DNA from: Prasinococcaceae sp. CCMP 1430
Taxonomy: Eukaryota; Plantae; Prasinodermophyta
Assembly (NCBI GenBank): GCA_013416795.1
Contig: RQSC01000032.1
Location: 124,001-188,000, forward strand
DNA length: 64,000 nt
Direction: 5' to 3'
The notes beneath the pieces are model-generated. The model ran no database searches. It was not told the origin of the DNA and saw only the letters and a list, made by a program, of their open reading frames with translations. Positions 2,587 to 43,045 of this stretch are shown piece after piece. Position 1 is the stretch's first letter. Each line of letters starts with the position of its first letter. The position numbers and the translations under genes are program-made.

Positions 2587-4784
2587 CAGAGGGCCTCGCG
2601 CAGCGGATTGCCGCGGGAGACGTGCCGCAGTCTTTGAAGGGCACACGGCTGGTTGCACTGGACTTGGCCAGTCTCGTCGCGGGTGCCAAGTACCGCGGCG
2701 AGTTCGAGGAGCGCCTCAAGGCAGTCCTCGACGAGGTGAAGGGCGCCGAGGGGCGCGTCATCCTATTCATCGACGAAATCCACTCGGTCGTCGGCGCCGG
2801 CGGCAGCGAGGGCTCCATGGACGCCGCGCAAATCCTCAAGCCTGCGCTCGCGCGCGGCGAGCTCCGCTGCATAGGCGCGACCACCCTGGGCGAGCACAAG
2901 AAATACATCCAGGGCGACGCGGCGCTCGAGCGCCGCTTCCAGCCCGTCTACGTGGCCGAACCCTCGGTGGACGACACCATCGCCATCTTGCGTGGCCTGC
3001 GCGACCGCTACGAGGCGCACCACGGCGTTCGCATCCAGGACGCTGCGCTCATCGCCGCCGCGCAGCTCAGCAAGCGGTACGTGCAGGGACGATTCCTGCC
3101 CGACAAGGCCGTCGACCTCGTCGACGAAGCGTGTGCGGACGTACGCGTCGTTTTGGACAGCCAGCCTGAGGAGGTGGAGCGCATCCAGCGTGCGGTGATG
3201 CGCTTGTCCATCGAGCGCGAGGCGCTCAAGAAGGACGAGGAAGCCGGCCGTGGAGTCGCCGGCACGGGGCTGTTCGCCGGCAAGGAGGCCAAGGCCGCGG
3301 CCGCCTCCGCCAAGGAGCGCGCCAAGGAGGTCGAGGACGCCCTCGCGCAGCTCAACGAGAAGCTTGTGCCTCTCAAGGCGCAGATCGATGGCGAGAAGGC
3401 CGCGCTCGAGCGCATCAACGTGCTCACGCAGAAGCGCGAGGACCTCAAGGTGCGCATCGCCGAGGCCGAGGCGCGCTATGACCTGCCGACCGCCGCCGAC
3501 CTCAAGTATGGCGCGCTCGTGGAGACCGAGGAGGCGCTGGCCAAGGCGGTGCAGGAGCAGGAGCAGACGAGCAAGGACGGCCGCCTGCTCACCGAGGTCG
3601 TGGACAAGGCGCGGATCGCCACCATCGTGAGCCGCTGGACGGGCGTGCCTGTGAGCAAGCTGAGCGAGGGCGAGTCGGACAAGCTCCTCCGCCTCGAAGA
3701 GCGACTGAACCGCCGCGTCGTGGGCCAGAAGGTAGCGGTCAAGGCCGTCGCCGACGCCGTGCTGCGCTCGCGCGCGGGCATGAGCGCGATGGGAAGGCCC
3801 GCGAGTTTCCTATTCCTAGGGCCGACGGGCACGGGCAAGACCGAGCTCTCGAAGGCTCTCGCGCGCGAGCTGTTCGACGACGAGTCGCAGGGACTCGTTC
3901 GTTTCGACATGTCGGAGTACATGGAGAAGCACGCGGTGTCTCGTCTCATCGGCGCGCCCCCAGGCTACGTGGGCCACGACGAGGGCGGGCAGCTCACCGA
4001 GGCGGTGCGAACGCGCCCATACCGTGTCCTCCTCTTCGATGAAGTGGAGAAGGCGCACAGGGACGTGCTCAACACGCTCCTCCAGATGCTGGACGACGGG
4101 AGGCTCACTGATTCTAAGGGACGGACGGTGGACTTCTCACAGACGACCGTGATCATGACCAGCAATATCGGTGCGCAGCATCTCCTAGATGCGGCGATGG
4201 CGTCGTCGCCGACGCTGCTCGACGAGGAGGCCGAGGCCAGGGGCGCTAGCGGGGACGCGGCGGCCATGCCCGCGGCAGTCGACCCTGCCTATGAGCGCGC
4301 GTCGCAGCTGGCGCTCGCCGAGCTGCGCGCAGAGTTCCGGCCCGAGCTACTCAATAGGCTCGACGACATCGTGGTGTTCCGGCCGCTGGGCTCTGCGCAG
4401 CTGCGCAGCGTGGCGCGCACGGCCGCCGCGGAGATAGCAAAGCGCCTCGCCCACAGCAGGCACGCCGCCAAACTCGTGATGACGGACGCTGCGCTCGACC
4501 AGGCCGTGAGGGAGAGCTATCAGCCCGCGTACGGCGCGCGCCCTCTGCGTCGCTGGATGGACCAAAAGCTCGGCACACTCGTCTCGCGAGCCGTGCTGAG
4601 CAACCAGATCCAACCTGGATGTGTCGTGACCGTCGACGTGGATGGCGCTGCGCTCGCGCTGCGCGTGACCGACGGTGACGGCGGAGAGGTTCGCGTCGCC
4701 AAGAAAGCGCGCACCGTGGACGTTGGCGATGGCGATGAGGACTTCGAGTCTGACGAGGAGGGCGTGGATCTCATGGCGGAGTGA
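1326..4784 (+). CDS. HSP101: Cytosolic ClpB/HSP101 AAA+ disaggregase; short 5' exon from 1326, main exon 2142-4784
   Basis: [78 protein letters not shown]...AGHAQ at 1326 resembles the HSP101 N-terminus. The main frame has a stop at 2127 and a TGAC...CAG acceptor at 2141. The donor is uncertain (GT at 1470 is phase-compatible). Confidence 0.93.
2015..2087 (-). tRNA. trnA: tRNA-Ala (anticodon AGC)
   Basis: 73-nt cloverleaf GGGGGAGTAGCTCAAATGG...CGTCA-TTAGCAT-TGACG...GGATCGATACCCGGCTTCTCCA; G3:U70 pair, A73 discriminator, T7 Pol III terminator just downstream (2007-2013). Confidence 0.96.
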
Positions 4785-5385
4785 GGCGAGGGCGCATCGC
4801 AAGGTTGCACCCAGTCAAGCGCGCGCTCATGAGCATCATGTACTGTAATTATGTGTAAACAATGTCTAGTCAGTCCCGAGCGGCGCGGACGCTCAGCCGA
4901 AGCGCGGCGCTCTCACCCGTGCTCGAACGTCTCGCACACGCCAGCGCAGCACGTCGCCTGTGGACGTCGCTGTGGATCCATTCCTTGCTACCGTACAGGC
5001 GCGCCATGAGGTCTCACCCTTCCCGAAAATTCATGCTTTCTTGTGCGACGCCAACTCATCCCGCTTTTCGATAGTCGAATCGATGCATTTTCGAAATCCA
5101 TCAACCGATCGTCATGCGTGACCTCAACACCCGTGCGCACCACGCGTGGGAAGAGGGACCAGCACACCCACGCCACGGCGATGCGATGCGTGCGTCCGCG
5201 GCCACCCCTCCGCCCGCGGAGGAGCACGCACGCTGCCGTCTGGGCTGGGCAACGTCGGGGAGGAAGAGGGCGGGGGGGGTCACAGCGCGCGCGCTGCGCG
5301 CACGGTCGGCGCGCGGCGCCGACGCTCGGTCGTTGCTGTGCCGAGGACGCGCGGCGCCCAACAGGCGACAGGCGCTACAGCACTT

Positions 5386-7231
5386 ATGTTGGCGACGACG
5401 CATGCTGGTGGGAGGCTGCGGCGGGTGGTCCAAGCCGTCCTCGTCTTCGTTGGCGCCACGGGCGCTCGCGGGGTCGACGGGCGCGCACTGGCAGCGACGG
5501 CTGTGACCAGCGGTGATTCTCCCTATAAGGGCGCATGCTGGGAACAGCTGTGGAACTTGAGTGTGGGTACGACGCGCGATCCGCTGCGCCATCTCGATGG
5601 TGCGACCGTGGCGGGCACGCACGCGCACCCGCTCGCCGAGGGGCTCACGTGGTTTCCTGGCGAACACGTCCCCTTGCGCGAGGACTTCCTGCGCGAGCAC
5701 GCCAGCCCAGGGGAGACGCCCGCGGATGTCACCGAGGCTGCCTACCGCGCCATGCAGCAGTACGCCGAGTTTCCGATACCATCCGACCGCGAGCAGGCGC
5801 TATTGGAAATGAAGCGCGTCGCCGATCGCCTGGTGCCTCCCACGGGGGCGAGGAAGCAGGCGATGCTATACGGGGGGCTTCCAAACGACGAGTTCGAGAC
5901 CTGGAACGACGGCCAGGCGGCCATCGCGGAGCGCGGCATGGCCGCCTTCAATGAAAACAGGGCGGAGCGGCACGAAATGCTTAAGCCGCTGCTCGCGCGC
6001 GCGAGCGGCGAGGCGAGTGGGGGGCCGAGGCACACAGTGGGCGTTATCACGGTGAACTCTGGGCACATTGACCAGCTGCTCAACATGTTGTGCTCGGTGC
6101 TTGCCAACGGCATCGACGCGGACGCATTTCTGGCGCGTGTACTGGTGTTTCCGATGGACGAGGACGCGCTCGAAACGCTCCGGCGCGTCGAGGCATCGAC
6201 TGGCATCATCGTGGTGCCCTCTGTTGCGGGGGAGCTTGGCGACTGGTACCACAACCCACAGTACCGGGCAAGTAAATCGGAGGGCGCGGGCGTGTTTGGA
6301 GACGCGAAGTTCCGCGTGGCGCTGCATTGGAAAAATGCGGTGGTTATGGACGTCATCGACCTCGGCTATGAACTCTTTTTTATGGATGCCGACCTGGCGT
6401 TCTTCGAGGCGCCCTGGGCGGCCCTCGCCGACGAGACCGATGGTTGCGACGTCGCCTTCTCATGGGACGGCAAGATATGGAACAACCGGCACAAAGACCC
6501 TCAGAGCGGTCTCCTAACCTACCGAGCTCTGAACAGCGGCCTGTACCTCATGCGTGCGAACGAGCGCACGAAAGCCATGTGGGGTGAGATGCTGTATCGT
6601 CAGAACTTGCACAACTCGCAGCAGGCCGTGCTCAAGGGCGTCGTCATGCGGCACTGGTGGCGACACGACCTAAGGGTGTGCATGCTCAGCGAGCGTTTCG
6701 TGAATGGCCACCGCCTGATGCCCGACAAGCCTCCGAAGATGCCTTCTGACTACGTGTCCATGCACGCCAGCTGGGTGAAGAACTCGACCATAAAGATCGT
6801 CAAGTGGCGTCGGGCCGGTGCTTGGTACTACAACGAGCGGTGCCCCATCTTCGCGGACACGTACGATACGCTCTCAGAGCGGACACGCGCCGATATCGAG
6901 ATGACAGGCACGTGCCTTCAAAATCGTTTTTGGGAGAAGCAGACGGGCAGACCCGCGAAGCAGCTCTACCCGGGCGTCGTCGAGAAGCAATTCATGGTCT
7001 GCGACAAGGGCAAGTGTCGATATGAGCTCCTTGCTGGAAGGACGCACGCGCGTGCGGTTTTTGGTGGTGTGGCCGCCTCGACGCCGCTGACACGCGCGTT
7101 CCCCGGGCACGTCGCGACCCACTCACGTCGATCCTGCACATCGCCACTGCCACCACTGCCACCCTGCGCGCACAGACGCTATCGACTTCTTCAAGGACGT
7201 CTGCATGCCCGACGTTGGCGTCTACCGCTGA
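5386..7231 (+). CDS. Nucleotide-diphospho-sugar transferase (GT77-like), probable type II membrane protein; intron 7052-7175
   Basis: N-terminal hydrophobic segment, [24 protein letters not shown] (DxD), [20 protein letters not shown]; GT-AG intron gives a C-ending-codon last exon. Start codon uncertain. Confidence 0.75.
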
Positions 7232-32963: not shown

Positions 32964-34399
32964 TCACACCGCCATCTTCATGGGGATGGTTTTGTGCGGC
33001 TTGTAGCCCTCCAGCGTGAAGTCCTCCATTGAGAAGCCGTCGATGTCCTTCACGTCAGGGTTGATGCGGAGCGTAGGGAAAGGCCTCGGCTCGTTCTGCA
33101 GCTGCTCGAGCAGCGGGTCGACGTGATTGAGGTACACATGCGCGTCGCCCAGCGTGTGCACAAACTCGCCGGGCTTGAGCCCGCACACCTGGGCGAGCAT
33201 GACCGTGAGCAGCGAGTACGATGCGATGTTGAAGGGCACGCCGAGGCCCATGTCACATGAGCGCTGGTACATCTGACAGCTCAGCTCGCCATTGGCCACG
33301 TAGAACTGCGCGAACATGTGGCAGGGCGGCAGCGCCATCTTGGCGAGCGCGGCGGGGTTCCACGCGGTGAGCACGATGCGTCGGTCGGTGGGGTTGTTCT
33401 TGATCTTCTCGACGACCTCCGCCAGCTGGTCCACGCCCTGGCCAGCGTAGTCCGCGTGCATGTCGCTGTACTCGGCGCCGAAGTGCCTCCACTGGAAGCC
33501 GTACACCGGCCCGAGGTCCATCTCCTCGCGCTCGGTGAGCCCGCGCGAGTCAAGGAACTCGCGGCTGCCGTTGCCGTCCCAGATCTTGACGCCACGCTGC
33601 GAGAGCTCCTTGGCGTTGGTGCTCCCCTTAACGAACCACAGCAGCTCCTCGGCAACGCCGCGCCAGAACACGCGCTTGGTCGTGAGCAACGGAAGCTGGC
33701 CACGGCGCAAGTTGAAGCGCATCTGGCGGCCGAAGACCGAGAGCGTGCCCGTGCCCGTGCGATCGCTGCGCTCGACGCCCTCCTCGATGATCTCCTTGAT
33801 GAGGTCAAGGTACTGGTACTCCTCGTGCTCGCGCAGCACGCTCTTCGGCAGCGGCTGGGGGGCGACCGCGGGCGCCGGGGCCTTGGCGGCGCCGTTCTCG
33901 CCATTAGCGCCCGAGGCGCTCGTGGGGGCAAGCGGTGCGGGCTTCCGCACGTACGTGAGGAAGCTGGTCGTGCAGCCCACGCCGCGCTCGCGCTTTGGGG
34001 GCGACTGCCTCCACAGCGAGAAGGTGTCGGTGTCGATGGGGCCCGGGAGGAACGTGTCGCAGTCGAAGTCCCTTCCGCCTACCTCGGTGAGGTGCACGGC
34101 ATCGCACAGCGGGTGCGCAAGCGCCTCGCGGTACACCTCTCCTCCACCGATCACGAAGACGCTCTCCACGGAGGCGGCGTGCGCGGGCTCGGCGAGCGTG
34201 CGCAGAGCGCCCTCGAGCGAGTCGCTCTGCACGACCGCGTCGGGCAGCGCCAGCTTGCCCGCACTGCGCGAGAGCACCACGTTGAGGCGGCCAGGCAGCG
34301 GGCGGAAGCGCTCCGGCAGGCTCTCCCACGTCCGCCTGCCCATCACCACCGCGTTGGTCATGCCGTCAGTGCCCGCGGAGCGCTTGCCCTTGCCCTTGC
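32964..34399 (-). CDS. DHFR-TS: Bifunctional dihydrofolate reductase-thymidylate synthase (first exon in or near the N-gap)
   Basis: [34 protein letters not shown]; [55 protein letters not shown]; CTGAC branch and CAG acceptor at about 34400. Confidence 0.96.
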
Positions 34400-34531
34400 C
34401 TGCTCGGGTGCGCAGAGCGCGGCGCGGCGCGGCGCGGCACGGCACGAGCGGGAGGGGCGCGTGCGAGGGCGGCGGCGTGGCGCGGGCGCGTCAGCGATCG
34501 CCCGCAGCAGGTGCACTATGCGCGCGGCAGG

Positions 34532-34652
34532 NNNNNNNNNNNNNNNNNNNNNNNNNNNNNNNNNNNNNNNNNNNNNNNNNNNNNNNNNNNNNNNNNNNNN
34601 NNNNNNNNNNNNNNNNNNNNNNNNNNNNNNNNNNNNNNNNNNNNNNNNNNNN
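34532..34652. other. Assembly gap (N run)
   Basis: Run of N. Confidence 0.99.
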
Positions 34653-34975: not shown

Positions 34976-37900
34976 CTACGAAAGGCCGCGGCGGGCGGGC
35001 GTGGCGGATGGGCGCCACAGCGCCCGAGCGAGCGCCAAGGCCAGGAGCACCGCTGAGGCGCCCGCCGCCGCGCACGCGAGCTCTCGCCGCCACCCTTCGC
35101 TCGTCCACTGCCGGTAGGCCAACGACACTGGCGCGGCGTACGCGTTGCGCACGGATTCGCCGTCGGTGATGCACGGCGTGCAGTCAGCGCGCAGCCTCGG
35201 CGCCCGCGCATCCTCATCGCGCTCGACCTGCCGAGCGACCTCATTGTCCCCGCCGGACGCCGCGAGCTCCTCGCACGCGTGCCGCAGCGCGCGCAGTAGG
35301 TACTCGATGTCGCCCGCGCTGACCACCATCGGCGGCTTCATCTTCAGCACGTTGTCGAAGGGTCCGTCGGTGGAGATGAGCACGCGCCAATCGCGCACCC
35401 GGCGCGCGATCCATGAGGCCCGAGCGGGCGCGGGCGTGTGCGCGCTCGCCCGGCCGTCGCGCGCTCGGCGCACCACCTCGAGGCCAACGAATAGGCCCCT
35501 GCCGCGCGCCTCTGCGAGGAAGTCGAAGCGTTCAGCAAGCTCGTGCAGGCCGGTGAGTAGCTCCAGGCCACGCTCGCGCGCGCGGTCCGAGAGGGCCTTG
35601 CGCTCGAGCGCATCGAGCGTCGCCGTGGCAGCTGCGGCAGCCGCGGGCGTGCCACCGAACGTGGCGAAGAACTCCATGCCAGTCGTGCCGAACGCGTCGG
35701 CTACAGCTCGAGTCGTCACAACCGCGCCGCATGGATAGCCATTGGCAATGGGTTTGCCGAGCGTCACGATATCGGGGGTCACCTCATGTTCCGAGAAGGC
35801 CCATGGCGTGGCACCGCCTGTCCGCCAGAAGCCGGTCTGAACCTCATCCACCACGCACAGCGAGCCACCCGCCCTGGCGAGCGCAAAAGCCTCGCGCAGG
35901 TATCCGGCAGGCAGCGGGATCTGACCACCGCAACCTAGTATGGCCTCCACCACGAAGGCAGCGGCGCCGCCGCCTAGCCCAGACCGACGCCGCTCGCAGG
36001 CGCGTTCGACGGCGCGCCTGACGGGCAACGCGTACGCGGTGCCCGAGGACTGCGGGCGGCGCAGCGGGTCCGGCGCCGCCACTTTGAGCACATGAGCAGG
36101 CTGCGCCCGACCACCGGGACCATCCTGCTTGTACGGCGATATCTCGATCAGGTCCTGTGTGTGGCCGTGGTAGGCTCCAGAGAGAACAATGACGTCCGTG
36201 CCTTCGCCCCCGTGCGTCGCTGCACGCGCCATCCGGAGCGCGAGGTCATTCGCTTCGGACCCCGACGTGACCATGTAGACCACGCACAACTCAGGCGGAA
36301 AGAGTGACGCCAAGCGAGCGCAGTAGTCAATCATTCCCTCGTGCAGGTATCGACTGTGAGGGCGCAAGCGTTCCTGCAGCGTCAGCGAAGCGACCCAGGA
36401 GGCGTGCATGCGCATCGATGGCGCTTGCGGGGAGTGCGGCAGCCAACGCACCTGTTGGAATTGAATCTGCGTAGCTGCTTGCACACGGCGGCGTCAATCG
36501 ACGGCTCGCAGTGGCCGCAGTGCGCGACGTTGTTGACCCTTCGAGCGAGATCGCGGCGAGGTGAGTCGTGTCAGCTCTGCGCACGTCTGTCGATGCGCGA
36601 GATAGCTATAGGGGAGCTCCAGGCGAGAGCACGCGCGCGCGGAGAGGCCCATGCATACCAATCGACGAGCAAAAGAGCAGGTGGTGCGAGCGCAAGACCG
36701 CTGATCACGCACATGTCAAGATATCGCAAACCTGCACTTGTGTAGAGGTACTGTCCGGCGCCGCGCGCCATGTGGAGCGCACCGGCGGCATCTGGGCCGC
36801 CCGAGCTACCCGACAGCGAAAGGTTCCGTCCGCAGTGGTCGTGCCGAAGCCGTGCGAGGTCCAGTGCGTTGGCGATGCGGGCGTCGCGGCTCTCCAAGCC
36901 GCTCGCACCCTGAGAGGCCTCCACGGACGTCGTGCTGGGCCGACGCGACGTGCGCGTGTGCGAGCGCTCTCGAGCGATTTCAAGAAGCTCAGCAGGTAGC
37001 GCTGGCACCCCGACCAGCCAATTTGAATCGGGATACACCGACAGGGCAATAGAGCATGTCTCGCGCTCGTGCTCGTTGTCGGCTGCTTCTTGTTCGAATG
37101 ACGAAATCGACGGCGGGACATCCGCACCGCTGCCGAGGAGCGAGAGGGCCAGCTGAATGCATACGCGTGGCACGTGGCCTCCGTTTCGGGCCGCGTTCGC
37201 ACAAGAGCCAAGCTCCTGGCCCGCTGCCAGCACCGTCCCCACCGATGCTGCGACATCCGCAACGCCGCCGTACACGCAGTAGAAATCGATTCCCAACGCG
37301 CGATGCCGCATCAGCACAGCCGGAGCGATTCCCAGCCTGTCGGTGCCTGAGACCGTCTCTACCACTTCGCCAGCCAGCGGACACACAACGCGAGTGCCGG
37401 CTGGCACATACAAGTCCATGCCGAGCCGACGCTCGCCGCCGTACGTGGAGCCATACGGGAGCACGAGCATGCTGCCGCCGGTGTTTGCGAGTGTCTTCTC
37501 GACAGCAGTGACTGAGCATATTGCGTCGCTGACGCCTCCTTCGAAGTCGTCACCATGCACGATCAGCTCGCGCGCGTTCAGGTCGGCCTCCGCGGCGTGC
37601 ACGATGGCTCGCAGCTCGCCGGTCTCTCGCAACGCGCTCAACGCGAGCCGGAGCTCCGCAGCCCGCGCGGCGAGGCCCGATGCCATACCCAGCGCAGCGC
37701 GCAGCGCGAGCGCACACGCCTGCGGCGTGTAGCGCTCGCGCGCCGCGTGCATGCGCACCAGCAGATCGCGTGCAGGCGCCTGCGATATCAACAGGTATTC
37801 GAGCTGTTCCGACTCCGCCAAGTCGGTGGACGTGGGCACGCCCGAATCCTCTTGGGTCGTCTTTGCCGGTGACGATGCAGGCGACGTCGCCGCACGATCG

Positions 37901-39132
37901 TACGCCTTCTGTGCGGCGGCGGCAGCATTCGCGGTGGACATAGCCAGCGATACGCACGCGCGCATCATGGCGAGCGGAAACATGATGTCGAGCTCCACCT
38001 CCATGAGCGTGAACGCCGAGTGGTAGCCCCTCACGAGCACGCAGGCTGCCCGCCACGGATCCGACGAGGCATGCTCGAACATCATTGCGTAAACACAGGC
38101 TATCGCACAGTCGTTGACGGTGTCTGTGACGCAGGCGTCCCCGTAATCAATGAGTGCCACTGCGCGCCCATCCCTGACTATGACGTTGTTCTCGTTCGCG
38201 TCGTTGTGCACCGCGCTTCGCCGAAGGCGCGCGCCTGACCGCTGCACGCTCTCGAGCGCGTCTGCGTGCAGGTCCATCGCCCACCCGCACGCGGCCTTCT
38301 CCTCGGCGGTGCGCAGCAGCCCCGCATATCGCGCGACCACGGTGCGCGCGCAGGATAGATCCCACGCAAAGCTGCCTCGCCGCGCGCCCTCATGATCGAA
38401 GGCCGCCTCGGTGAGTGCGGTGGTCACTTCACCCGCCGCGCGCCCCCAAGACTCGAGCAGCGCCATGCGCTCGCCGTCCAATGCGTGGTGCTGTTTGCGT
38501 TCCCTAGCGCTGTCGAGCGCGCGCGGGTAGGCGCTGCCCATCGTCTCCCCGGGGAGGAAGCTGACGCATCGCGCGAGATAGCCACCGACTCTCGCCACCC
38601 GGCGCTCCCGTGCAGAGTCCACACCGCTGCTCGTGCCCCAGCCGCGGTGGTCGGACGACACCCTCGGGCGCGGCGAAAATGCTACCGACTTCCGCAGCGA
38701 CGGAGGTGGGGTGGTTGCTGCAGCTCCAATCGCTGCCACCGGTGATCCTGCTGCCGCTGTGGCCACCGATGCGTGCTCGTGCTCGCTGACGAGTCCACTG
38801 CTGAGCCTCCGCCCGCGGGTGGCTGTGACTGCCGGCAGAGCGCGCGGCGCTTCGACGCCGGCCGCGCGCACCGCATCCTGTGCGCTGACCTCCATGTCCA
38901 CGGCGCGCGGGCTCTCGTAGTTGTTGCTGAGCTTGAGCAGCCAGCGCTCTCCTGCGCCATCGCTGAATAGCACGTTGAGGTCTCGCTCGGACGGAAGTGT
39001 AGTCGCCGACGCGGCCGCAGTCGCGGGCGTGCCAGGCAGGCCGAACGTCAGCAGCGCCGCCTTCGCCGCGTCGCCTGGGTCCAACGGCGGCACGCCGTGG
39101 CCCGGCCTGCCTTCCCACGCGGCGGATGACAT
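34976..39132 (-). CDS. APH/hydroxylysine kinase-like + degenerate M23-like + class III PLP-dependent enzyme fusion (about 1294 aa); introns 36539-36712 and 36354-36451
   Basis: LPSERDLN, HNDANENNV, LIDYGD; GMDLYVPAGTRVVCPLAGEV...NGGHVP; spliced RYLDM|VNNVAHCGH...NSNS|RYLH, SGSEANDLALR, DEVQTGF, DIVTLGKPIANG, KMKPP. Confidence 0.88.
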
Positions 39133-39423
39133 CCCCCGGCAGGGCCGCTCGCCATCCGCGGTGGGCAGCGCCGCGCCGCGCGAGTCCCTTCCCCTCACCA
39201 CCTACCCACCCGCGCCCCGCGATGAGGGGGGGGGGGGGAGGAGTAGCAACTAACTAGACTAGAGCAAGGCAAACGCGCGCGGCGCCCCTCAGGTGTGCCG
39301 GCGAAACGGTCTACTGAGCGCTCGGGCTGCTCGGCGCGCGCAGAGTGGTGCCCACAAATACAGTGGGCCTGGGCCGGGCGCAGACAATTAAACCCTATAC
39401 CAAACCCTAATTCGATGCCGCGT

Positions 39424-42400
39424 CTACGCCGAGGCCACCGCTTCAACCTGCGCCTTGAGGGCTAGCACGCGCCGCTCGACGGCCTCGCGCACCTCCAGGG
39501 TCGACTGCAGGCGCAGCTTGTCGCCCATCCACGCGGCTGCACTGCCCGAGGCAACTACGACTCCGCGTGGCCGCCTCGTCGCGACGGCGTCGGAGGCGTC
39601 GTCGCTGGCACAGGCGGGCGCGCCCGGGTCCGAGGTGGTGCTTCGTCGACAGGACGCCGCAGTCGCGCGGCGGCTCACCCGCCGCTGCAGTCGCTTCCCG
39701 AGGAGCTGCAGCTGCGCCACCTGCGCCAGCGCGTGCTCGCTTATCTCACTCGCCTCGGCGGGTGTGCGGGGGCGCGAGAGCGACGCGGACGAGCTCACCG
39801 ACGCCGGGCGCGAGCCCGAGCATGACACCGCGCCCCCCGCCTGCGCAGGGGTCACCGGCGCCAGCGGTACCAGTGCCGCACGGGCACGCTCGGCGGGGTC
39901 AAGCAACGGCGTGGGTGCACGATCCTTTTGTAGCCGGTCCTTGTCGGTCTGCTGCGCGCACCTCTGCCGTGACGGCGCCAGCTGAACCGATGCACGCGGA
40001 GTCGCACGGGCGCATGCGTCCTCCTCGCTGCTGGTATAAGGAGAGGAGCAGAGACCGGAAGAAGCAGTCCCCTCCGTCCTCGTAATGATCCCTTGCGAGC
40101 GCGGCGCGGGCTGAGACAAGAGTGCCCCTGTCGCCCTGGCGATGCCGGCACTCCTCGGCGCCTTGGAGCTCACCCATGATTTTGCGCTCCTCCTTGCGAG
40201 AGGCTGCGATGCGCTCGCGGCGGTGCGTTTGAGACTCGGCGTCCGCAGCAGCGCCCCCGAGCGAGGCGCATGACCCCACGGCGTGGCCTGCGTCAGCCGA
40301 GCCGCAGCCGACGCGGGTCGGACTGCGCGCGAGCGCGCGTATGGCGACGCTCGAGTAAGGCATGCAGCGACTGCGGCGTTCGCCGACGATCGCGCTCGAG
40401 CCAGGCCGCCTGCTGTCTTGCCCGCACTGGCAGCTGCCTTGACACCTTGGGATGCGCGTAGGCGTGGCGCGGCACTCGCCGGCCTGCGTGTTTGCCTCAG
40501 CTTGCGCAGCGCAGCGCGCGCGGCTTCCGGCATTGATGCGTCCTTGGGGGTCACCGAGCGTGCGGTCTCGTTCGCACCCTGCTGGGCGTCCTTTGATTCG
40601 CGCAGCACCCTGTCCTCCGCCGATGCCAGCATGTCACGCCACACGATATCAGCGGTCGACAGACTGAGTGTCTCTCGCTTGCAGTCCATCGAAGCGCACA
40701 CCGACGTGGTCGTCGGGCTGCGCTCGTCGCCGCCCTTTGCACGCGGGGATGGGGCAGTCTCAGCACAGCTTCCAGTGTCGACACTCTCTGCGCCCGCGTT
40801 CGTCTCGTTTATGCCGACAGCTGCGCGCGCATCTTTGTCCCGTTTGGAGCTCGATGCGTCCACGCCCGACTGCGAGCTCGTGTCCGAGTCCGATACTTGA
40901 TCTGGGTCCGAGGTCGGTCCCGCCGAGCTTGTGTCTATGCGCCTTCTCAAAGAGCTCGTAGCCACCGGAGACGTTGTCCTCACAGGCGAACCGAGCGCGG
41001 CGAATGCCTCGTCGATGATGCCGACGATGTGTTCTTCGCTCTCGGCCTCGGCCTGCGGCATGGCCGTCGCGACACGAGGGTCGCTCGCGGTGAGGCGTGG
41101 GCTGCTTGCCTTGCTTGCGGGGCTAGGCGCCGATGTGAAGGTTGTGGAAGGCAAAGCGGGTGAAGACGCTCGGCCGCCAGTGCGCGCCAGCAGCTCTCCA
41201 CGCGCACGGTTGACCTGCCCCCCTCGGAGCGCATCGCTGATGGTAGCAGAGGTGTCACCGTTGCTAGCGATGCCCTGCGGCGAGCCAGTGGCGTCTCGCT
41301 CTTGTAAGTCATTCTCCCCGCCCGCGTGGTCGGTGGTATTCCGCTGGTGCAGCTCGAGCTTAGATGGCGATGGCGATACCTGCGTGACTGACGGTGCCGA
41401 CGGGATCGCGATCACCTCCACGGGTGGCGATGGTGACCCGCCCACCTGTGGGGGGATGAGGGCTGGAGATTCGCTCTGTGCGGGCGGCCGTGTACGTGCA
41501 GTGCGCATGAGAAGCTCCCCTCTCGCACGATTGGGGCTCTCTCGCGCGCCCGCAGTGGGTGGGCCCGAGACATGCGACGCCGGCAGCGTCTCGCCAGTGG
41601 TGCTCTGATCGACGCTAGCGAAAACGCACATGTCGTCATCCGCATGAACGCAGCGCAGGCTGAGGACGCCGATGTGGGTACCACTCTGTGCTATCTCGAG
41701 AGGCAGCGACTCGCTCACTCCCGGCAGCGAGCACTCCGATCCCACAGTGGACGAGAGCGATGCCGGAGCACATGGCGTGGCCTCCTCGATGGATGATGAC
41801 AGCTGCGGCGCCTGTAGCTCGACGTGTTTCGATTCCAAATGCTGCGGATGCAGGATGCCTCGAGCATTCGTTCCCTCGTCGATCCCTTCGATATCAATCG
41901 TGACAGGGTTTCCCCCCCCACCGTGTGCGCTCTCGTCGTTCGCATGAGTGCACCCTTCATCCTGCTCCGACGTGTCGCTCGGCTCGGTGTCATCGGAATC
42001 GGAGGCGCTCGGCATCATTGCATCAGGCAGCAACTCGCGGCGCTGGAGCTCCTTCGCCGTGAGCGCTCCTGCAGCACGCAACAGCCTCCGTCGATGGCCA
42101 GGGGGTATGGACACTTCCGTGTAGCGCTCGACCTCAACGATGTCAGCGTCGCTGAAAACGGCCACATCGTCCATGATGTCGTATCCCGCCTTCAAGACCG
42201 CATCGACGAGGCCCGGCGCCACGCCGAAGCTGCGCAGGTGAGCGCGCACGGCCTCCGTCTCAGCTGGTGCCTCGTCAGAGGCGAGAGAGAGTCTTTGCGG
42301 CGCATCTTTGTGCGTCTCACGAGGTAGCACGTGTCCGCTCTCGCCTCCATCTCGCTGCCTGTCGATGTCGCTGAGCGTCGAGACGTCGTCGCACTTGGCG

Positions 42401-42945
42401 CTCGCCTCGACAGGTGCATTTTGGGCGGCCTCTCCCGAGTCCGGCGGCGGCGCGGCTTCGTGCGCGGCCTGAGGCTGCGGCTGCATCTCCGCGGTGCTGC
42501 TCTGTGGTACAGGTTCACCTATAGTCTCGAGCTGTCGAGGCACGTCATCGCCGCTGGCTGACACGTTCTCTAACTCTGCGGAGGCGCTGGTTCCGGCGGC
42601 CTCCTCATCCTCTGGTCGGTCGACCAACACGCAATCGTCGCCGGCGGATTTGGTGCTCTCAGACGCTTGCTCGCGAGTGTTGTTGTCCTCGCACCAATCG
42701 CTGGGTAGCACAAAGGTGGGAGCGACGGTCGTCGAGGAGGTACCCGCGTCAGTCTTTGAGCGCGCGCCGCATACACGCGCCGCCTCCTCGCTCGCTGCGG
42801 AGAGCGGCGATGACGGCGGCGGCAGTGGGAGAGGCAGGACTGCGGGGCCAGCAACACCCTCAGCCTCTCGTGAACGCGCTGGTAGCTGTGTAGCTGCTGC
42901 CATGCGGCGCTGCACCGCGTGCTGCTTCGAGCTGCATACCCCCAT
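39424..42945 (-). CDS. Large disordered protein with N-terminal MGxCxS acylation motif and a SAM-like domain
   Basis: MGVCSSK at ATG 42945; HLRSFGV...KAGYDIMDD...SIPPGHRRRLL (about 42070-42255); Ser/Pro/Ala-rich remainder. Confidence 0.6.
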   Translation of the reverse strand: MGVCSSKQHAVQRRMAAATQLPARSREAEGVAGPAVLPLPLPPPSSPLSAASEEAARVCGARSKTDAGTSSTTVAPTFVLPSDWCEDNNTREQASESTKSAGDDCVLVDRPEDEEAAGTSASAELENVSASGDDVPRQLETIGEPVPQSSTAEMQPQPQAAHEAAPPPDSGEAAQNAPVEASAKCDDVSTLSDIDRQRDGGESGHVLPRETHKDAPQRLSLASDEAPAETEAVRAHLRSFGVAPGLVDAVLKAGYDIMDDVAVFSDADIVEVERYTEVSIPPGHRRRLLRAAGALTAKELQRRELLPDAMMPSASDSDDTEPSDTSEQDEGCTHANDESAHGGGGNPVTIDIEGIDEGTNARGILHPQHLESKHVELQAPQLSSSIEEATPCAPASLSSTVGSECSLPGVSESLPLEIAQSGTHIGVLSLRCVHADDDMCVFASVDQSTTGETLPASHVSGPPTAGARESPNRARGELLMRTARTRPPAQSESPALIPPQVGGSPSPPVEVIAIPSAPSVTQVSPSPSKLELHQRNTTDHAGGENDLQERDATGSPQGIASNGDTSATISDALRGGQVNRARGELLARTGGRASSPALPSTTFTSAPSPASKASSPRLTASDPRVATAMPQAEAESEEHIVGIIDEAFAALGSPVRTTSPVATSSLRRRIDTSSAGPTSDPDQVSDSDTSSQSGVDASSSKRDKDARAAVGINETNAGAESVDTGSCAETAPSPRAKGGDERSPTTTSVCASMDCKRETLSLSTADIVWRDMLASAEDRVLRESKDAQQGANETARSVTPKDASMPEAARAALRKLRQTRRPASAAPRLRASQGVKAAASAGKTAGGLARARSSANAAVAACLTRASPYARSRAVRPASAAARLTQATPWGHAPRSGALLRTPSLKRTAASASQPLARRSAKSWVSSKAPRSAGIARATGALLSQPAPRSQGIITRTEGTASSGLCSSPYTSSEEDACARATPRASVQLAPSRQRCAQQTDKDRLQKDRAPTPLLDPAERARAALVPLAPVTPAQAGGAVSCSGSRPASVSSSASLSRPRTPAEASEISEHALAQVAQLQLLGKRLQRRVSRRATAASCRRSTTSDPGAPACASDDASDAVATRRPRGVVVASGSAAAWMGDKLRLQSTLEVREAVERRVLALKAQVEAVASA

Positions 42946-43045
42946 CGCGTCCGCGCGCCGCCGCGGGCTGCGCCTCGCACTGAGGCTTCGCCGACCTGCA
43001 GCAGCACACCCCGCACCGTCCGCGCCCACTCGCGCCATCCTCACT

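What the first reader, a model, noticed from the sequence alone, without database searches (positions are those of the whole stretch)
34976..39132. Intron-bearing, bacterial-style APH kinase + dead M23 + PLP phospho-lyase fusion with a membrane tail
Seen: two canonical introns join three domains into one ORF of about 1294 aa. It has an APH-fold kinase (LPSERDLN, HNDANENN, IDYGD), an M23-like domain whose Zn ligands appear lost (HxxxD reads RRLGMD, HxH reads PRVCIQ), and a class III PLP enzyme (DEVQTG, GKP lysine). A hydrophobic C-terminal helix follows. Known: hydroxylysine kinase and the AGXT2L-type phospho-lyases (PHYKPL/ETNPPL) are separate genes in animals, while APH-(M23)-aminotransferase III fusions occur in bacteria. 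Inference: a horizontally acquired, now eukaryotised, single-polypeptide amino-alcohol catabolic pathway (phosphorylate, then eliminate phosphate and ammonia). It may be organelle-anchored, with the M23 module kept as a non-catalytic binding domain.
Basis: partly seen in the sequence, partly recalled or inferred. Interest (0 to 1): 0.8.

Follow-up and report, generated by a model that had tools for sequence, protein, structure and literature searches.

The report
Bacterial kinase–lyase fusion in green alga
A marine green picoalga (Prasinoderma coloniale) carries a spliced nuclear gene, almost certainly acquired from bacteria, that joins a small-molecule kinase, a dead peptidase-like domain and a phosphate-and-ammonia-removing enzyme into one protein with a likely membrane tail, a real but moderately surprising case of gene transfer.

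Summary
On the minus strand, three exons (39132-36713, 36538-36452, 36353-34976) separated by two GT-AG introns encode a 1294-aa protein. It has an APH-fold kinase with intact catalytic motifs and an M23/LytM-fold domain that has lost four of its five catalytic or zinc residues. It also has a class III PLP domain closest to the solved phospho-lyases (human ETNPPL, Arthrobacter A1RDF1), and a 95-residue C-terminal extension ending in the most hydrophobic segment of the protein.

The junctions match the published Prasinoderma coloniale model PRCOL_00000023 and an intronless 1272-aa homologue from another marine organism of 70% GC. The annotated model is N-terminally truncated.

The architecture is that of a large, uncharacterised bacterial family (NCBIfam NF004799). 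It occurs in at least 594 bacterial species, against only these two eukaryote-type lineages among 1.84 billion representatives. Transfer from bacteria is the best reading, but the donor is unresolved.

In marine Flavobacteriaceae the fusion sits among glycosidase, hydroxyproline and prolidase genes, which points to 5-hydroxylysine from collagen as the bacterial substrate. The algal substrate and the membrane anchoring remain inferred.

Verdict: a new variant of a known kind, of moderate interest. The scan had not reported this gene before.

The parts
36713..39132 (-). Exon 1 (aa 1-806 plus 2 nt): kinase, linker, M23-like domain and the first ~25 residues of the PLP domain; start ATG at 39132
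   Evidence: ORF list. Collinear with P0002 and bacterial fusions. Against TARA contig L001, 10 of 11 exon-1 differences are at third codon positions, including codons 57 and 102. The 169 nt upstream of the ATG carry 13 differences including 5 indels.
37873..39075 (-). APH-fold small-molecule kinase (aa ~20-420), predicted active: N-lobe Lys67, HNDANENN (309-316), IDYGD (328-332)
   Evidence: Pfam PF01636, 56.4 bits against a cut-off of 23.2. K67, D311, N313, N316, D329, G331 and D332 are invariant in 49 sequences. AF2 pLDDT is above 90 over most of the domain. Foldseek top hits are homoserine, amicoumacin and aminopropanol kinases. 31 of 34 highly conserved bacterial columns are kept.
38614..38802 (-). 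Low-complexity insertion in the kinase N-lobe (aa 111-173), absent from bacterial homologues, shorter in P0002
   Evidence: Alignment; AF2 pLDDT below 50.
37138..37470 (-). M23/LytM-fold domain (aa ~555-665) with a dead active site: the His of HxxxD is Arg (RLGMD), the mid-domain catalytic His is Gly (VYGGV), HxH reads R-V-C; only the Asp is kept
   Evidence: Pfam 23.2 bits, below the 28.7 cut-off. Alignment to bacterial fusions: 116 of 125 read H-D-H-H-H. Isolated-domain AF2 model has pLDDT 83, and all of the top 50 Foldseek hits are M23/LytM domains, including the dead ones of EnvC and DipM. Only 14 of 27 conserved columns are kept.
36539..36712 (-). Intron 1, 174 nt, GT-AG (GTGCGT...AAG), phase 2, inside the PLP domain
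   Evidence: Absent from the homologue on L085. Retained with 3 substitutions in TARA contigs.
36452..36538 (-). Exon 2 (87 nt, aa 807-836): the VNNVAHCGHCEP... segment of the PLP domain
   Evidence: Restores the conserved LDxxNNVxHxGHxxP block seen in P0002, bacterial fusions and human ETNPPL.
36354..36451 (-). Intron 2, 98 nt, GT-AG (GTGCGT...CAG), phase 2
   Evidence: The alternative acceptor at 36374 gives the wrong frame (read).
34976..36353 (-). Exon 3 (aa 836-1294 plus stop): rest of the PLP domain and the C-terminal extension
   Evidence: Pfam Aminotran_3, 193.8 bits. PDB best hits are ETNPPL 6tor and phospholyase 5g4i.
35276..36780 (-). Class III PLP fold domain (aa ~785-1195, interrupted by both introns) of the phospho-lyase subfamily: SGSEAN 866-871, DEVQTG 1005-1010, PLP-lysine K1036 in TLGKPI
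   Evidence: Full-length alignment to human ETNPPL (311 bits) and A1RDF1 (241 bits); the next-best family, dialkylglycine decarboxylase, scores 163 bits. 107 of 123 conserved bacterial columns are kept.
34979..35263 (-). C-terminal extension (aa ~1200-1294) absent from bacterial homologues, ending in a hydrophobic Ala/Leu-rich segment (aa 1260-1282; 35015-35083) followed by a basic 12-residue tail. This is a candidate tail anchor.
   Evidence: It is the highest Kyte-Doolittle 19-residue window of the protein (1.96). The same holds in P0002 (1.84, 9 residues from its end). Bacterial proteins end at the PLP domain.

Best explanation
This is one nuclear, three-exon gene of Prasinoderma coloniale (published locus PRCOL_00000023). 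It descends from a bacterial kinase-M23-phospho-lyase fusion gene and has since acquired two spliceosomal introns, low-complexity inserts and a C-terminal extension.

The protein most likely carries out a two-step breakdown of an amino alcohol. The APH-fold kinase phosphorylates the hydroxyl group with ATP. The class III PLP domain then eliminates phosphate and ammonia from the phospho-intermediate to give an aldehyde or ketone. This is the chemistry of animal HYKK plus PHYKPL, or of ETNPPL.

The most likely substrate is 5-hydroxy-L-lysine, by analogy with the bacterial relatives' gene neighbourhoods. Ethanolamine or aminopropanol-type substrates are alternatives.

The M23 domain is folded but catalytically dead and probably serves as a structural spacer or interaction module between the two enzymes. 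The hydrophobic C-terminus probably tail-anchors the enzyme on a membrane, with the catalytic domains facing the cytosol.

Shown here: the gene structure, the domain identities, the dead M23 site, homology to the bacterial fusion family over the full length, and its rarity in eukaryotes. Inferred: the direction of transfer, the enzymatic activities, the substrate and the membrane anchoring.
For: Gene model. It is identical to the EukProt P. coloniale model over 1097 aa.

It is not contamination. The region has 65-70% GC like the rest of the window. It carries GT-AG introns and lies next to a DHFR-TS gene. The same intron-bearing gene is found on TARA contigs at 98.9% identity, with 16 synonymous against 12 non-synonymous changes.

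Homology to the bacterial fusion: NCBIfam NF004799 (1015-position profile) matches the kinase, linker/M23 and PLP parts collinearly (alignments).

Distribution: at least 594 loci in bacterial and archaeal species genomes, all inspected ones about 1000-1085 aa. Among 1.84 billion representatives only two close clusters exist, followed by a gap from E 1e-160 to 1e-35. No eukaryote-sourced protein is among the top 120 hits of P0002.

Catalytic competence: kinase motifs are invariant. PLP motifs and the lysine align with ETNPPL. Retention of conserved columns is 91% in APH and 87% in the PLP domain, but 52% in M23.

Phospho-lyase affinity: 6tor scores 311 bits and 5g4i 241 bits, against 163 bits for the next family.

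Substrate lead: in Flavobacteriaceae the fusion is flanked on the same strand by a GH63-like glucosidase (19 loci) and a LacZ-type GH2 beta-galactosidase (24 loci). It is also accompanied by proline-racemase-family (11), ornithine cyclodeaminase (7), DAO, M24 prolidase, S9/PD40 peptidase and aldose epimerase genes. This set fits the catabolism of collagen peptides, hydroxyproline and Glc-Gal-hydroxylysine.

Tail.
Against: No enzymatic or expression data were available here.

The algal and P0002 proteins sit on a very long branch (1.48 substitutions per site). They share substitutions at positions that are at least 90% conserved in bacteria and lie near the PLP site (for example the G of GFGR to W/Y, and the N of GGNP to T). 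Their substrate may therefore differ from the bacterial one.

The collagen-type neighbourhood is seen only in Bacteroidota, many of them related, and not in the other phyla.

The tree is unrooted and does not itself show nesting inside bacteria.

The tail is Ala-rich in a genome where Ala runs are common, and its hydrophobicity is only modest (1.96).

The published model starts at Met198, which would remove the ATP-binding N-lobe. If that is the real start, the kinase would be inactive.

The second lineage (P0002) is not proven to be eukaryotic. Its sugar transporter neighbour is closer to bacterial GlcP/XylE than to plant STP or human GLUT.
Confidence: 0.62

Rival explanations
1. Same enzyme logic but a different substrate: the protein degrades ethanolamine via phosphoethanolamine to acetaldehyde (ETNPPL-like), or 1-amino-2-propanol via its phosphate to propionaldehyde, rather than hydroxylysine.
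For: The best solved-structure match of the PLP domain is human ethanolamine-phosphate phospho-lyase. A structural neighbour of the kinase is the microcompartment-associated aminopropanol kinase 6ef6. The eukaryote clade has derived substitutions near the PLP site. Hydroxylysine is not a known abundant algal metabolite (my own knowledge).
Against: No PHYKPL structure exists to compare, so the ETNPPL best hit does not discriminate between substrates. The only genomic-context evidence for the family points to collagen-derived hydroxylysine.
Confidence: 0.25
2. Ancient vertical inheritance: the fusion was present in early eukaryotes or the green lineage and was lost almost everywhere, rather than transferred from bacteria.
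For: The unrooted tree places the eukaryote pair on its own long branch attached to the bacterial backbone, so a root on that branch cannot be formally excluded.
Against: Only two closely related clusters exist among 1.84 billion representatives, and none of the named or sourced top hits is from another eukaryote. The family spans at least 9 bacterial phyla. One of the two homologues is intronless. Animals keep the kinase and lyase as separate genes without M23 (Veiga-da-Cunha 2012, cited).
Confidence: 0.05
3. The locus yields two separate products (an 853-aa kinase-M23 protein and a 479-aa PLP enzyme, as prokaryotic gene callers split it), or the kinase is non-functional because translation starts at the annotated Met198.
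For: Metagenome gene calls split it this way. The published model begins at Met198.
Against: Unspliced reading truncates the PLP domain: its first ~55 residues are in exons 1 and 2. The published eukaryotic model joins the exons exactly as here. Codons 57 and 102 vary only at third positions, while the region upstream of 39132 accumulates indels. The N-lobe folds confidently and keeps the invariant Lys67.
Confidence: 0.06
4. The PLP domain is a genuine aminotransferase, and the kinase acts on something unrelated (for example antibiotic or aminoglycoside modification), so the fusion is not a kinase-to-lyase relay.
For: Most class III enzymes are transaminases. Pfam names the kinase family after aminoglycoside phosphotransferases.
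Against: The PLP domain is far closer to the two solved phospho-lyases than to any transaminase (311 and 241 bits against 163 or less). As I recall the paper (it could not be read here), the existence of these bacterial kinase-PLP fusions was the clue that led to the identification of HYKK, PHYKPL and ETNPPL (Veiga-da-Cunha 2012).
Confidence: 0.04

Closest known systems
Bacterial APH-M23-aminotransferase III fusion proteins (NCBIfam NF004799 / PRK06148 'hypothetical protein', and NF004800 / PRK06149)
   Same: Identical domain order and collinear homology over the kinase, the linker (YLLISQ block), the M23 domain and the PLP domain. Kinase and PLP catalytic motifs are conserved.
   Different: The algal protein scores far below the family's curated cut-off. 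It has two introns, disordered inserts, a dead M23 site (116 of 125 bacterial members keep all five residues) and a 95-residue C-terminal extension with a hydrophobic tail. The bacterial family itself has no experimentally assigned function.
Animal hydroxylysine kinase (HYKK/AGPHD1) plus 5-phosphohydroxy-L-lysine phospho-lyase (PHYKPL/AGXT2L2) and ethanolamine-phosphate phospho-lyase (ETNPPL/AGXT2L1)
   Same: The same predicted two-step chemistry. The PLP domain aligns end to end with human ETNPPL (311 bits).
   Different: In animals these are separate genes with no M23 domain and no tail. The algal PLP domain is closer to bacterial fusion proteins (340-350 bits) than to ETNPPL (252 bits, same query). 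The relation of the kinase to HYKK could not be tested here because no HYKK sequence was in reach.
Mycobacterial microcompartment aminopropanol kinase (PDB 6ef6) and its partner phospho-lyase
   Same: An APH-fold kinase acting on a small amino alcohol. It is a top-5 structural neighbour of the modelled kinase domain.
   Different: Separate proteins in a bacterial microcompartment locus. Only 14% sequence identity. The partner lyase is recalled from memory and was not tested.
Degenerate LytM (dead M23) domains such as EnvC, NlpD, DipM, SpoIIQ
   Same: An M23 fold retained without the zinc or catalytic histidines. These appear among the top structural matches. They are a precedent for a non-catalytic binding or regulatory role.
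   Different: Those are periplasmic or cell-wall regulators of amidases. Here the domain is embedded between two cytosolic metabolic enzymes, and nothing indicates a cell-wall partner.

Membership tests
APH / protein-kinase-like small-molecule kinases (Pfam PF01636) | Profile score above Pfam's gathering cut-off | tested here: met
   56.4 bits against a cut-off of 23.2.
APH / protein-kinase-like small-molecule kinases (Pfam PF01636) | Catalytic loop HxDxxxxN, metal-binding Asp (DFG-equivalent IDYGD), N-lobe ATP-binding Lys | tested here: met
   D311, N316, D329 and K67 are invariant, and H309 is at least 90% conserved, across 49 homologues. The fold matches homoserine, amicoumacin and aminopropanol kinases.
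Peptidase M23 (Pfam PF01551) | Profile score above Pfam's gathering cut-off | tested here: not met
   23.2 bits against a cut-off of 28.7, E 7.9e-5.
Peptidase M23 (Pfam PF01551) | LytM-type beta-sheet fold | tested here: met
   AF2 domain model has pLDDT 83. All of the top 50 Foldseek PDB hits are M23/LytM domains (TM to target 0.64-0.67, rmsd 2.4-2.9 A over about 105-115 columns for the best).
Peptidase M23 (Pfam PF01551) | Zinc ligands and catalytic histidines (HxxxD, mid-domain His, HxH) | tested here: not met
   The window reads R..D / G / R.C and P0002 reads E..D / G / R.R, whereas 116 of 125 bacterial fusions read H..D / H / H.H.
Class III PLP enzymes (Pfam PF00202) | Profile score above cut-off; PLP-binding Lys and the Asp of DEVQ | tested here: met
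   193.8 bits against a cut-off of 30.5. K1036 (TLGKPI), D1005 and SGSEAN align with the corresponding residues of human ETNPPL.
Phospho-lyase subfamily (ETNPPL / PHYKPL / A1RDF1) | Closer to characterised phospho-lyases than to any transaminase, decarboxylase or racemase of the class | tested here: met
   6tor scores 311.7 bits and 5g4i 240.8 bits, against 163 bits for the best other family.
Phospho-lyase subfamily (ETNPPL / PHYKPL / A1RDF1) | 1,2-elimination of phosphate and ammonia from a phospho-amino-alcohol | not testable with these tools
   Needs an enzyme assay.
NCBIfam NF004799 (PRK06148 bacterial tri-domain fusion) | Whole-protein score above the curated cut-off (1128 bits) | tested here: not met
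   P0002 scores 650.9 bits. The window pieces score 203.9 and 397.5 bits. A bacterial member, P0003, scores 1270.7.
NCBIfam NF004799 (PRK06148 bacterial tri-domain fusion) | Same domain order with collinear coverage of the profile | tested here: met
   Window pieces match profile positions 126-317 and 659-1011. P0002 matches 303-1012 in its best stretch. Alignments are collinear.
Spliceosomal-intron-bearing nuclear gene | GT-AG boundaries whose removal restores frame and homology | tested here: met
   Identical to the published model across both junctions. The homologue is contiguous at both sites.
Tail-anchored membrane proteins | A single hydrophobic segment within ~30 residues of the C-terminus and no N-terminal signal | tested here: inconclusive
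   The top hydropathy window is aa 1260-1278 (1.96), followed by a 12-residue basic tail. A comparable segment is present in P0002. The N-terminus aligns with the bacterial N-terminus, so there is no presequence. No dedicated predictor or experiment was available.
Bacterium-to-eukaryote horizontal transfer | Eukaryotic sequences nested within bacterial diversity in a rooted tree | tested here: inconclusive
   Long stem and unresolved backbone (support 35/35). A clade with the Acidobacteriota protein P0018 is not rejected (AU p = 0.186).
Bacterium-to-eukaryote horizontal transfer | Patchy eukaryotic distribution against a broad bacterial distribution | tested here: met
   At least 594 prokaryotic species loci, against two eukaryote-type clusters among 1.84 billion representatives.

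The most novel reading that the evidence does not exclude
The whole NF004799 family is the so-far unassigned bacterial route for catabolising collagen-derived (glycosylated) 5-hydroxylysine, with an active M23 domain that trims Hyl-containing Gly-rich peptides. Prasinoderma captured this enzyme from a marine bacterium, let the peptidase die and tethered the kinase-lyase pair to a membrane. It would use the enzyme either to scavenge nitrogen from dissolved hydroxylysine or amino alcohols, or, together with a 2OG-oxygenase/HYKK-like fusion noted elsewhere in this genome, as an endogenous hydroxylation-dependent lysine degradation route.
Probability: 0.22. Interest if true: 0.65.

Novelty: new variant of a known kind. 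Interest (0 to 1): 0.42.

Why it matters
It adds a clean, intron-bearing, selectively maintained example of bacterial metabolic gene capture to the deepest-branching green plant phylum. It shows which parts of a multi-domain bacterial enzyme survive in a eukaryote: the kinase and lyase stay constrained, the peptidase decays and a membrane tail is added.

The comparison also yields a testable function for a large, unnamed bacterial family (NF004799). In marine Flavobacteriaceae its gene neighbourhood ties it to collagen, hydroxyproline and glycosylated hydroxylysine breakdown.

Practically, the published P. coloniale gene model appears to lack its first 197 codons.

Tried and rejected
1. A FastTree of 135 full-length proteins put the eukaryote pair as sister to the Acidobacteriota protein P0018, which also has a decayed M23 (support 97). 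After removing the M23 columns and using a site-heterogeneous model this was not recovered, although the AU test does not reject it (p = 0.186). I therefore do not claim that the M23 decay predates the transfer.

2. I first misread the careful tree as giving 100/100 support for eukaryotes plus Bacteroidota. Parsing the tree showed that label belongs to the eukaryote stem, and the claim was withdrawn (note 3).

3. Introner-element test: neither intron has another copy in the window.

4. Synteny between the window and the P0002 contig: none beyond the gene itself (noisy tblastx).

5. Identity of the P0002 organism. No named cluster members were found for it or its neighbours. Seven of eight neighbour ORFs have no NCBIfam hit, and three of the eight have a Pfam hit (Sugar_tr, DJC28_CD, DUF3223). 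Its sugar porter is closer to bacterial than to plant or animal transporters, and a short Logan contig ends in a CTGC repeat rather than poly(A). Its nature is unresolved but probably eukaryotic.

6. Additional in-frame introns in exon 1: candidate GT donors exist, but none removes a non-conserved block in frame.

7. Literature. The primary paper (PMC3293546) is not held. No paper in the library describes the tri-domain fusion, phospho-lyase signature residues or bacterial hydroxylysine loci.

8. A sequence search of exon 1 against PDB found nothing at E below 0.01.


Full report
GENE MODEL. The window has 65-75% GC throughout. Two long minus-strand ORFs, 36571-39201 and 34976-36484, carry Pfam APH (E 4.7e-15) plus a sub-threshold Peptidase_M23 hit (E 7.9e-5, 23.2 bits against a cut-off of 28.7), and Aminotran_3 (E 5.2e-57). 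Reading the minus strand shows two GT-AG introns with the same donor, GTGCGT. Intron 1 is 36712-36539 (174 nt) and intron 2 is 36451-36354 (98 nt). Splicing 39132-36713, 36538-36452 and 36353-34976 gives 3885 nt, that is 1294 codons with a single terminal stop.

The 87-nt middle exon restores the conserved LDM-VNNVAHCGHCEP...NSN-SRYLHE block of AGXT2L-type enzymes. Both introns therefore lie inside the N-terminal part of the PLP domain, not between domains. The kinase, the M23 domain and the first ~25 residues of the PLP domain are already contiguous in exon 1.

INDEPENDENT CONFIRMATION. The spliced protein aligns in one HSP (52% identity, aa 13-1231) with a 1272-aa protein, P0002, encoded by a single uninterrupted ORF on marine metagenome contigs of 70% GC.

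A cluster look-up returned EukProt entry EP00793_Prasinoderma_coloniale_P004263, PRCOL_00000023-RA, of 1097 aa. It is 100% identical, without gaps, to residues 198-1294 of my model, so it uses exactly the same two junctions. This identifies the genome as Prasinoderma coloniale. The identification fits the 69.8% GC reported for that genome (PMC7455551) and earlier notes of this scan.

The published model starts at Met198 and lacks the kinase N-lobe. Three observations argue for the longer start at 39132:
- Residues 13-110 are homologous to P0002 and to the bacterial N-lobe, including the invariant Lys67.
- They fold with pLDDT above 90.
- Compared with a wild TARA contig (98.9% identical), 10 of 11 exon-1 differences are at third codon positions, including codons 57 and 102. 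The 169 nt upstream of 39132 carry 13 differences including 5 indels.

Overall there are 16 synonymous against 12 non-synonymous changes and no frame disruption. Both introns are retained in the wild population. Contamination or misassembly is excluded.

DOMAINS. Kinase: the catalytic loop HNDANENN (309-316), the metal-binding IDYGD (328-332) and Lys67 are invariant or nearly so across 49 homologues. The AlphaFold model of exon 1 (pLDDT 79, pTM 0.80) finds homoserine kinase, amicoumacin kinase and the microcompartment aminopropanol kinase as the best solved neighbours. A 63-residue insert (aa 111-173) is disordered and absent from bacteria.

M23: bacterial relatives read H..D, H and H.H at the five zinc or catalytic positions in 116 of 125 cases. 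The alga reads R..D, G and R.C, and P0002 reads E..D, G and R.R. The fold is nevertheless kept. An isolated-domain model (pLDDT 83) retrieves only M23/LytM domains among its top 50 PDB hits, including the naturally dead LytM domains of EnvC and DipM.

PLP domain: it aligns end to end with human ethanolamine-phosphate phospho-lyase (6tor, 311 bits) and the Arthrobacter phospholyase A1RDF1 (5g4i, 241 bits). The next family, dialkylglycine decarboxylase, scores 163 bits. SGSEAN, DEVQTG and the PLP lysine (K1036) are in place.

Constraint by domain: of the columns at least 90% conserved in 122 bacterial fusions, the alga keeps 31/34 in the kinase and 107/123 in the PLP domain, but only 14/27 in M23. 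Decay is therefore specific to the peptidase module.

C-terminus: about 95 residues extend beyond the bacterial end. They finish in the most hydrophobic 19-residue window of the protein (aa 1260-1278, Kyte-Doolittle 1.96) followed by a short basic tail. P0002 has the same arrangement (1.84). The N-terminus aligns with the bacterial N-terminus, so there is no presequence.

ORIGIN. NCBIfam holds two curated models for exactly this architecture: NF004799 / PRK06148 'hypothetical protein' (1015 positions) and NF004800 / PRK06149. Bacterial proteins pass them, and the algal protein matches collinearly but far below the cut-off.

The 80 retained loci, from Bacteroidota, Acidobacteriota, Chloroflexota, Thermodesulfobacteriota, Planctomycetota and other phyla, mostly encode fusions of about 1000-1085 aa; a few are shorter where the contig is cut.

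An exhaustive HMMER search of 1.84 billion representatives found only the alga's own cluster, P0002 and a fragment. A gap from E 1e-160 to 7e-35 separates these from the bacterial proteins. Among the top 120 relatives of P0002, every named hit is bacterial and none is eukaryote-sourced. The PLP domain alone scores 340-350 bits (49-52% identity) against bacterial fusion proteins, against 252 bits for human ETNPPL.

Trees do not resolve the donor. FastTree joined the eukaryote pair to an Acidobacteriota protein that also has a decayed M23 (P0018, HSR70237.1). With the M23 columns removed and an LG+C20 model, the pair instead hangs on a 1.48-substitution stem from an unresolved backbone. The AU test does not reject the P0018 grouping (p = 0.186).

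Transfer from bacteria therefore rests on distribution and architecture, not on rooted nesting. I rate it about 0.85. The homologue lacks both introns, so the introns are lineage-specific additions in P. coloniale.

Whether the P0002 organism is a second prasinodermophyte-like eukaryote (my estimate about 0.75) or an unsampled bacterium could not be settled. If it were bacterial, the tail and the dead M23 would predate the transfer.

FUNCTION. The two-step logic (kinase, then PLP-dependent elimination of phosphate and ammonia) is that of animal hydroxylysine kinase with PHYKPL, and of ETNPPL. These were identified by Veiga-da-Cunha et al. 2012 (reference confirmed). As I recall its abstract, the clue was the existence of these very bacterial 'bi- or tri-functional' kinase fusions. 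The paper itself is not held.

New here is the bacterial gene context. Clustering all neighbours of the 81 loci and scanning representatives against Pfam shows a recurrent same-strand arrangement in Flavobacteriaceae of several genera:
- a GH63-like glucosidase (19 loci), then the fusion, then a LacZ-type GH2 beta-galactosidase (24 loci);
- often a proline-racemase-family gene (11), ornithine cyclodeaminase (7), a DAO-type oxidoreductase, an M24 prolidase, a PD40/DPPIV-type peptidase and an aldose 1-epimerase.

This is the gene set expected for degrading collagen peptides, hydroxyproline and the Glc-alpha-1,2-Gal-beta-O-hydroxylysine unit of collagen. An alpha-1,2 glucosidase for that unit is a recognised enzyme class (EC 3.2.1.107; PMC13671375). 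It makes 5-hydroxylysine the best-supported substrate for the Bacteroidota members. It also suggests that the intact M23 domain there works on Gly-rich collagen peptides; this is inference.

The context is not seen in the other phyla. The algal clade also has shared substitutions at otherwise conserved positions next to the PLP site. Extending the substrate to the alga is therefore tentative (about 0.4). Ethanolamine and aminopropanol are the alternatives.

A first-reader note elsewhere in this genome mentions a 2OG-Fe(II) hydroxylase fused to a hydroxylysine-kinase-like domain. It was not tested, but it is a lead that the alga may make and degrade hydroxylysine itself.

VERDICT. The gene is a eukaryotised, selectively maintained descendant of a known but uncharacterised bacterial fusion family. 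It has a specifically decayed peptidase module and an added candidate tail anchor.

It is already present (truncated and undiscussed) in the published annotation, and bacterial gene capture by this alga is not in itself surprising. I therefore rate it as a new variant of a known kind with moderate interest.

Noticed in passing
window 32964-34445 (-), with an assembly gap at 34532-34652: The gene immediately downstream is a bifunctional DHFR-TS (dihydrofolate reductase fused to thymidylate synthase), recognised from its translation. A run of N lies just upstream of it, between the two genes.
   Followed up: no
window 38541-39132 (-): The published P. coloniale model PRCOL_00000023-RA starts at Met198 and omits 197 codons that encode the kinase N-lobe. 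Homology, the fold model and third-position-only variation indicate that these codons are coding.
   Followed up: yes
L005, L006, L013, L016, L017, L028, L034, L036, L038, L040, L058, L080 (genes flanking the fusion at about 3750-6780): In marine Flavobacteriaceae the fusion gene is flanked by a GH63-like glucosidase and a GH2 beta-galactosidase. Hydroxyproline-catabolic, prolidase and S9 peptidase genes lie nearby. This looks like an undescribed collagen / glycosylated-hydroxylysine utilisation locus.
   Followed up: partly
L084:8001-11003 (P0018, HSR70237.1, Acidobacteriota MAG): This is the only bacterial fusion among 125 inspected whose M23 site is also largely lost (R..D / G / R.Q). The loss is either convergent with the alga or marks the donor lineage.
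   Followed up: partly
P0164, P0166, P0173, P0197, P0209, P0243, P0251, P0254 (about 770 aa): A second bacterial architecture, kinase plus PLP domain without M23, is common. In the careful tree it nests among M23-bearing proteins with weak support, which suggests M23 loss rather than an ancestral two-domain form.
   Followed up: partly
L083:2957-5490: A contig binned as a Promethearchaeota (Asgard) archaeon carries the fusion (844 aa, cut by the contig end). Binning was not checked.
   Followed up: no
window 39424-43044 (-): The upstream neighbour is a 1206-aa, Ala/Ser/Pro-rich low-complexity ORF. The same neighbour is present on TARA contig L001.
   Followed up: no
If real, it could supply or process hydroxylysine for the enzyme studied here.
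   Followed up: no
P0009 (245 aa, 927-nt ENA contig): This gene call matches aa 501-658 of the protein at 96% identity but has unrelated ends. It is probably a chimeric or mis-called short contig.
   Followed up: no
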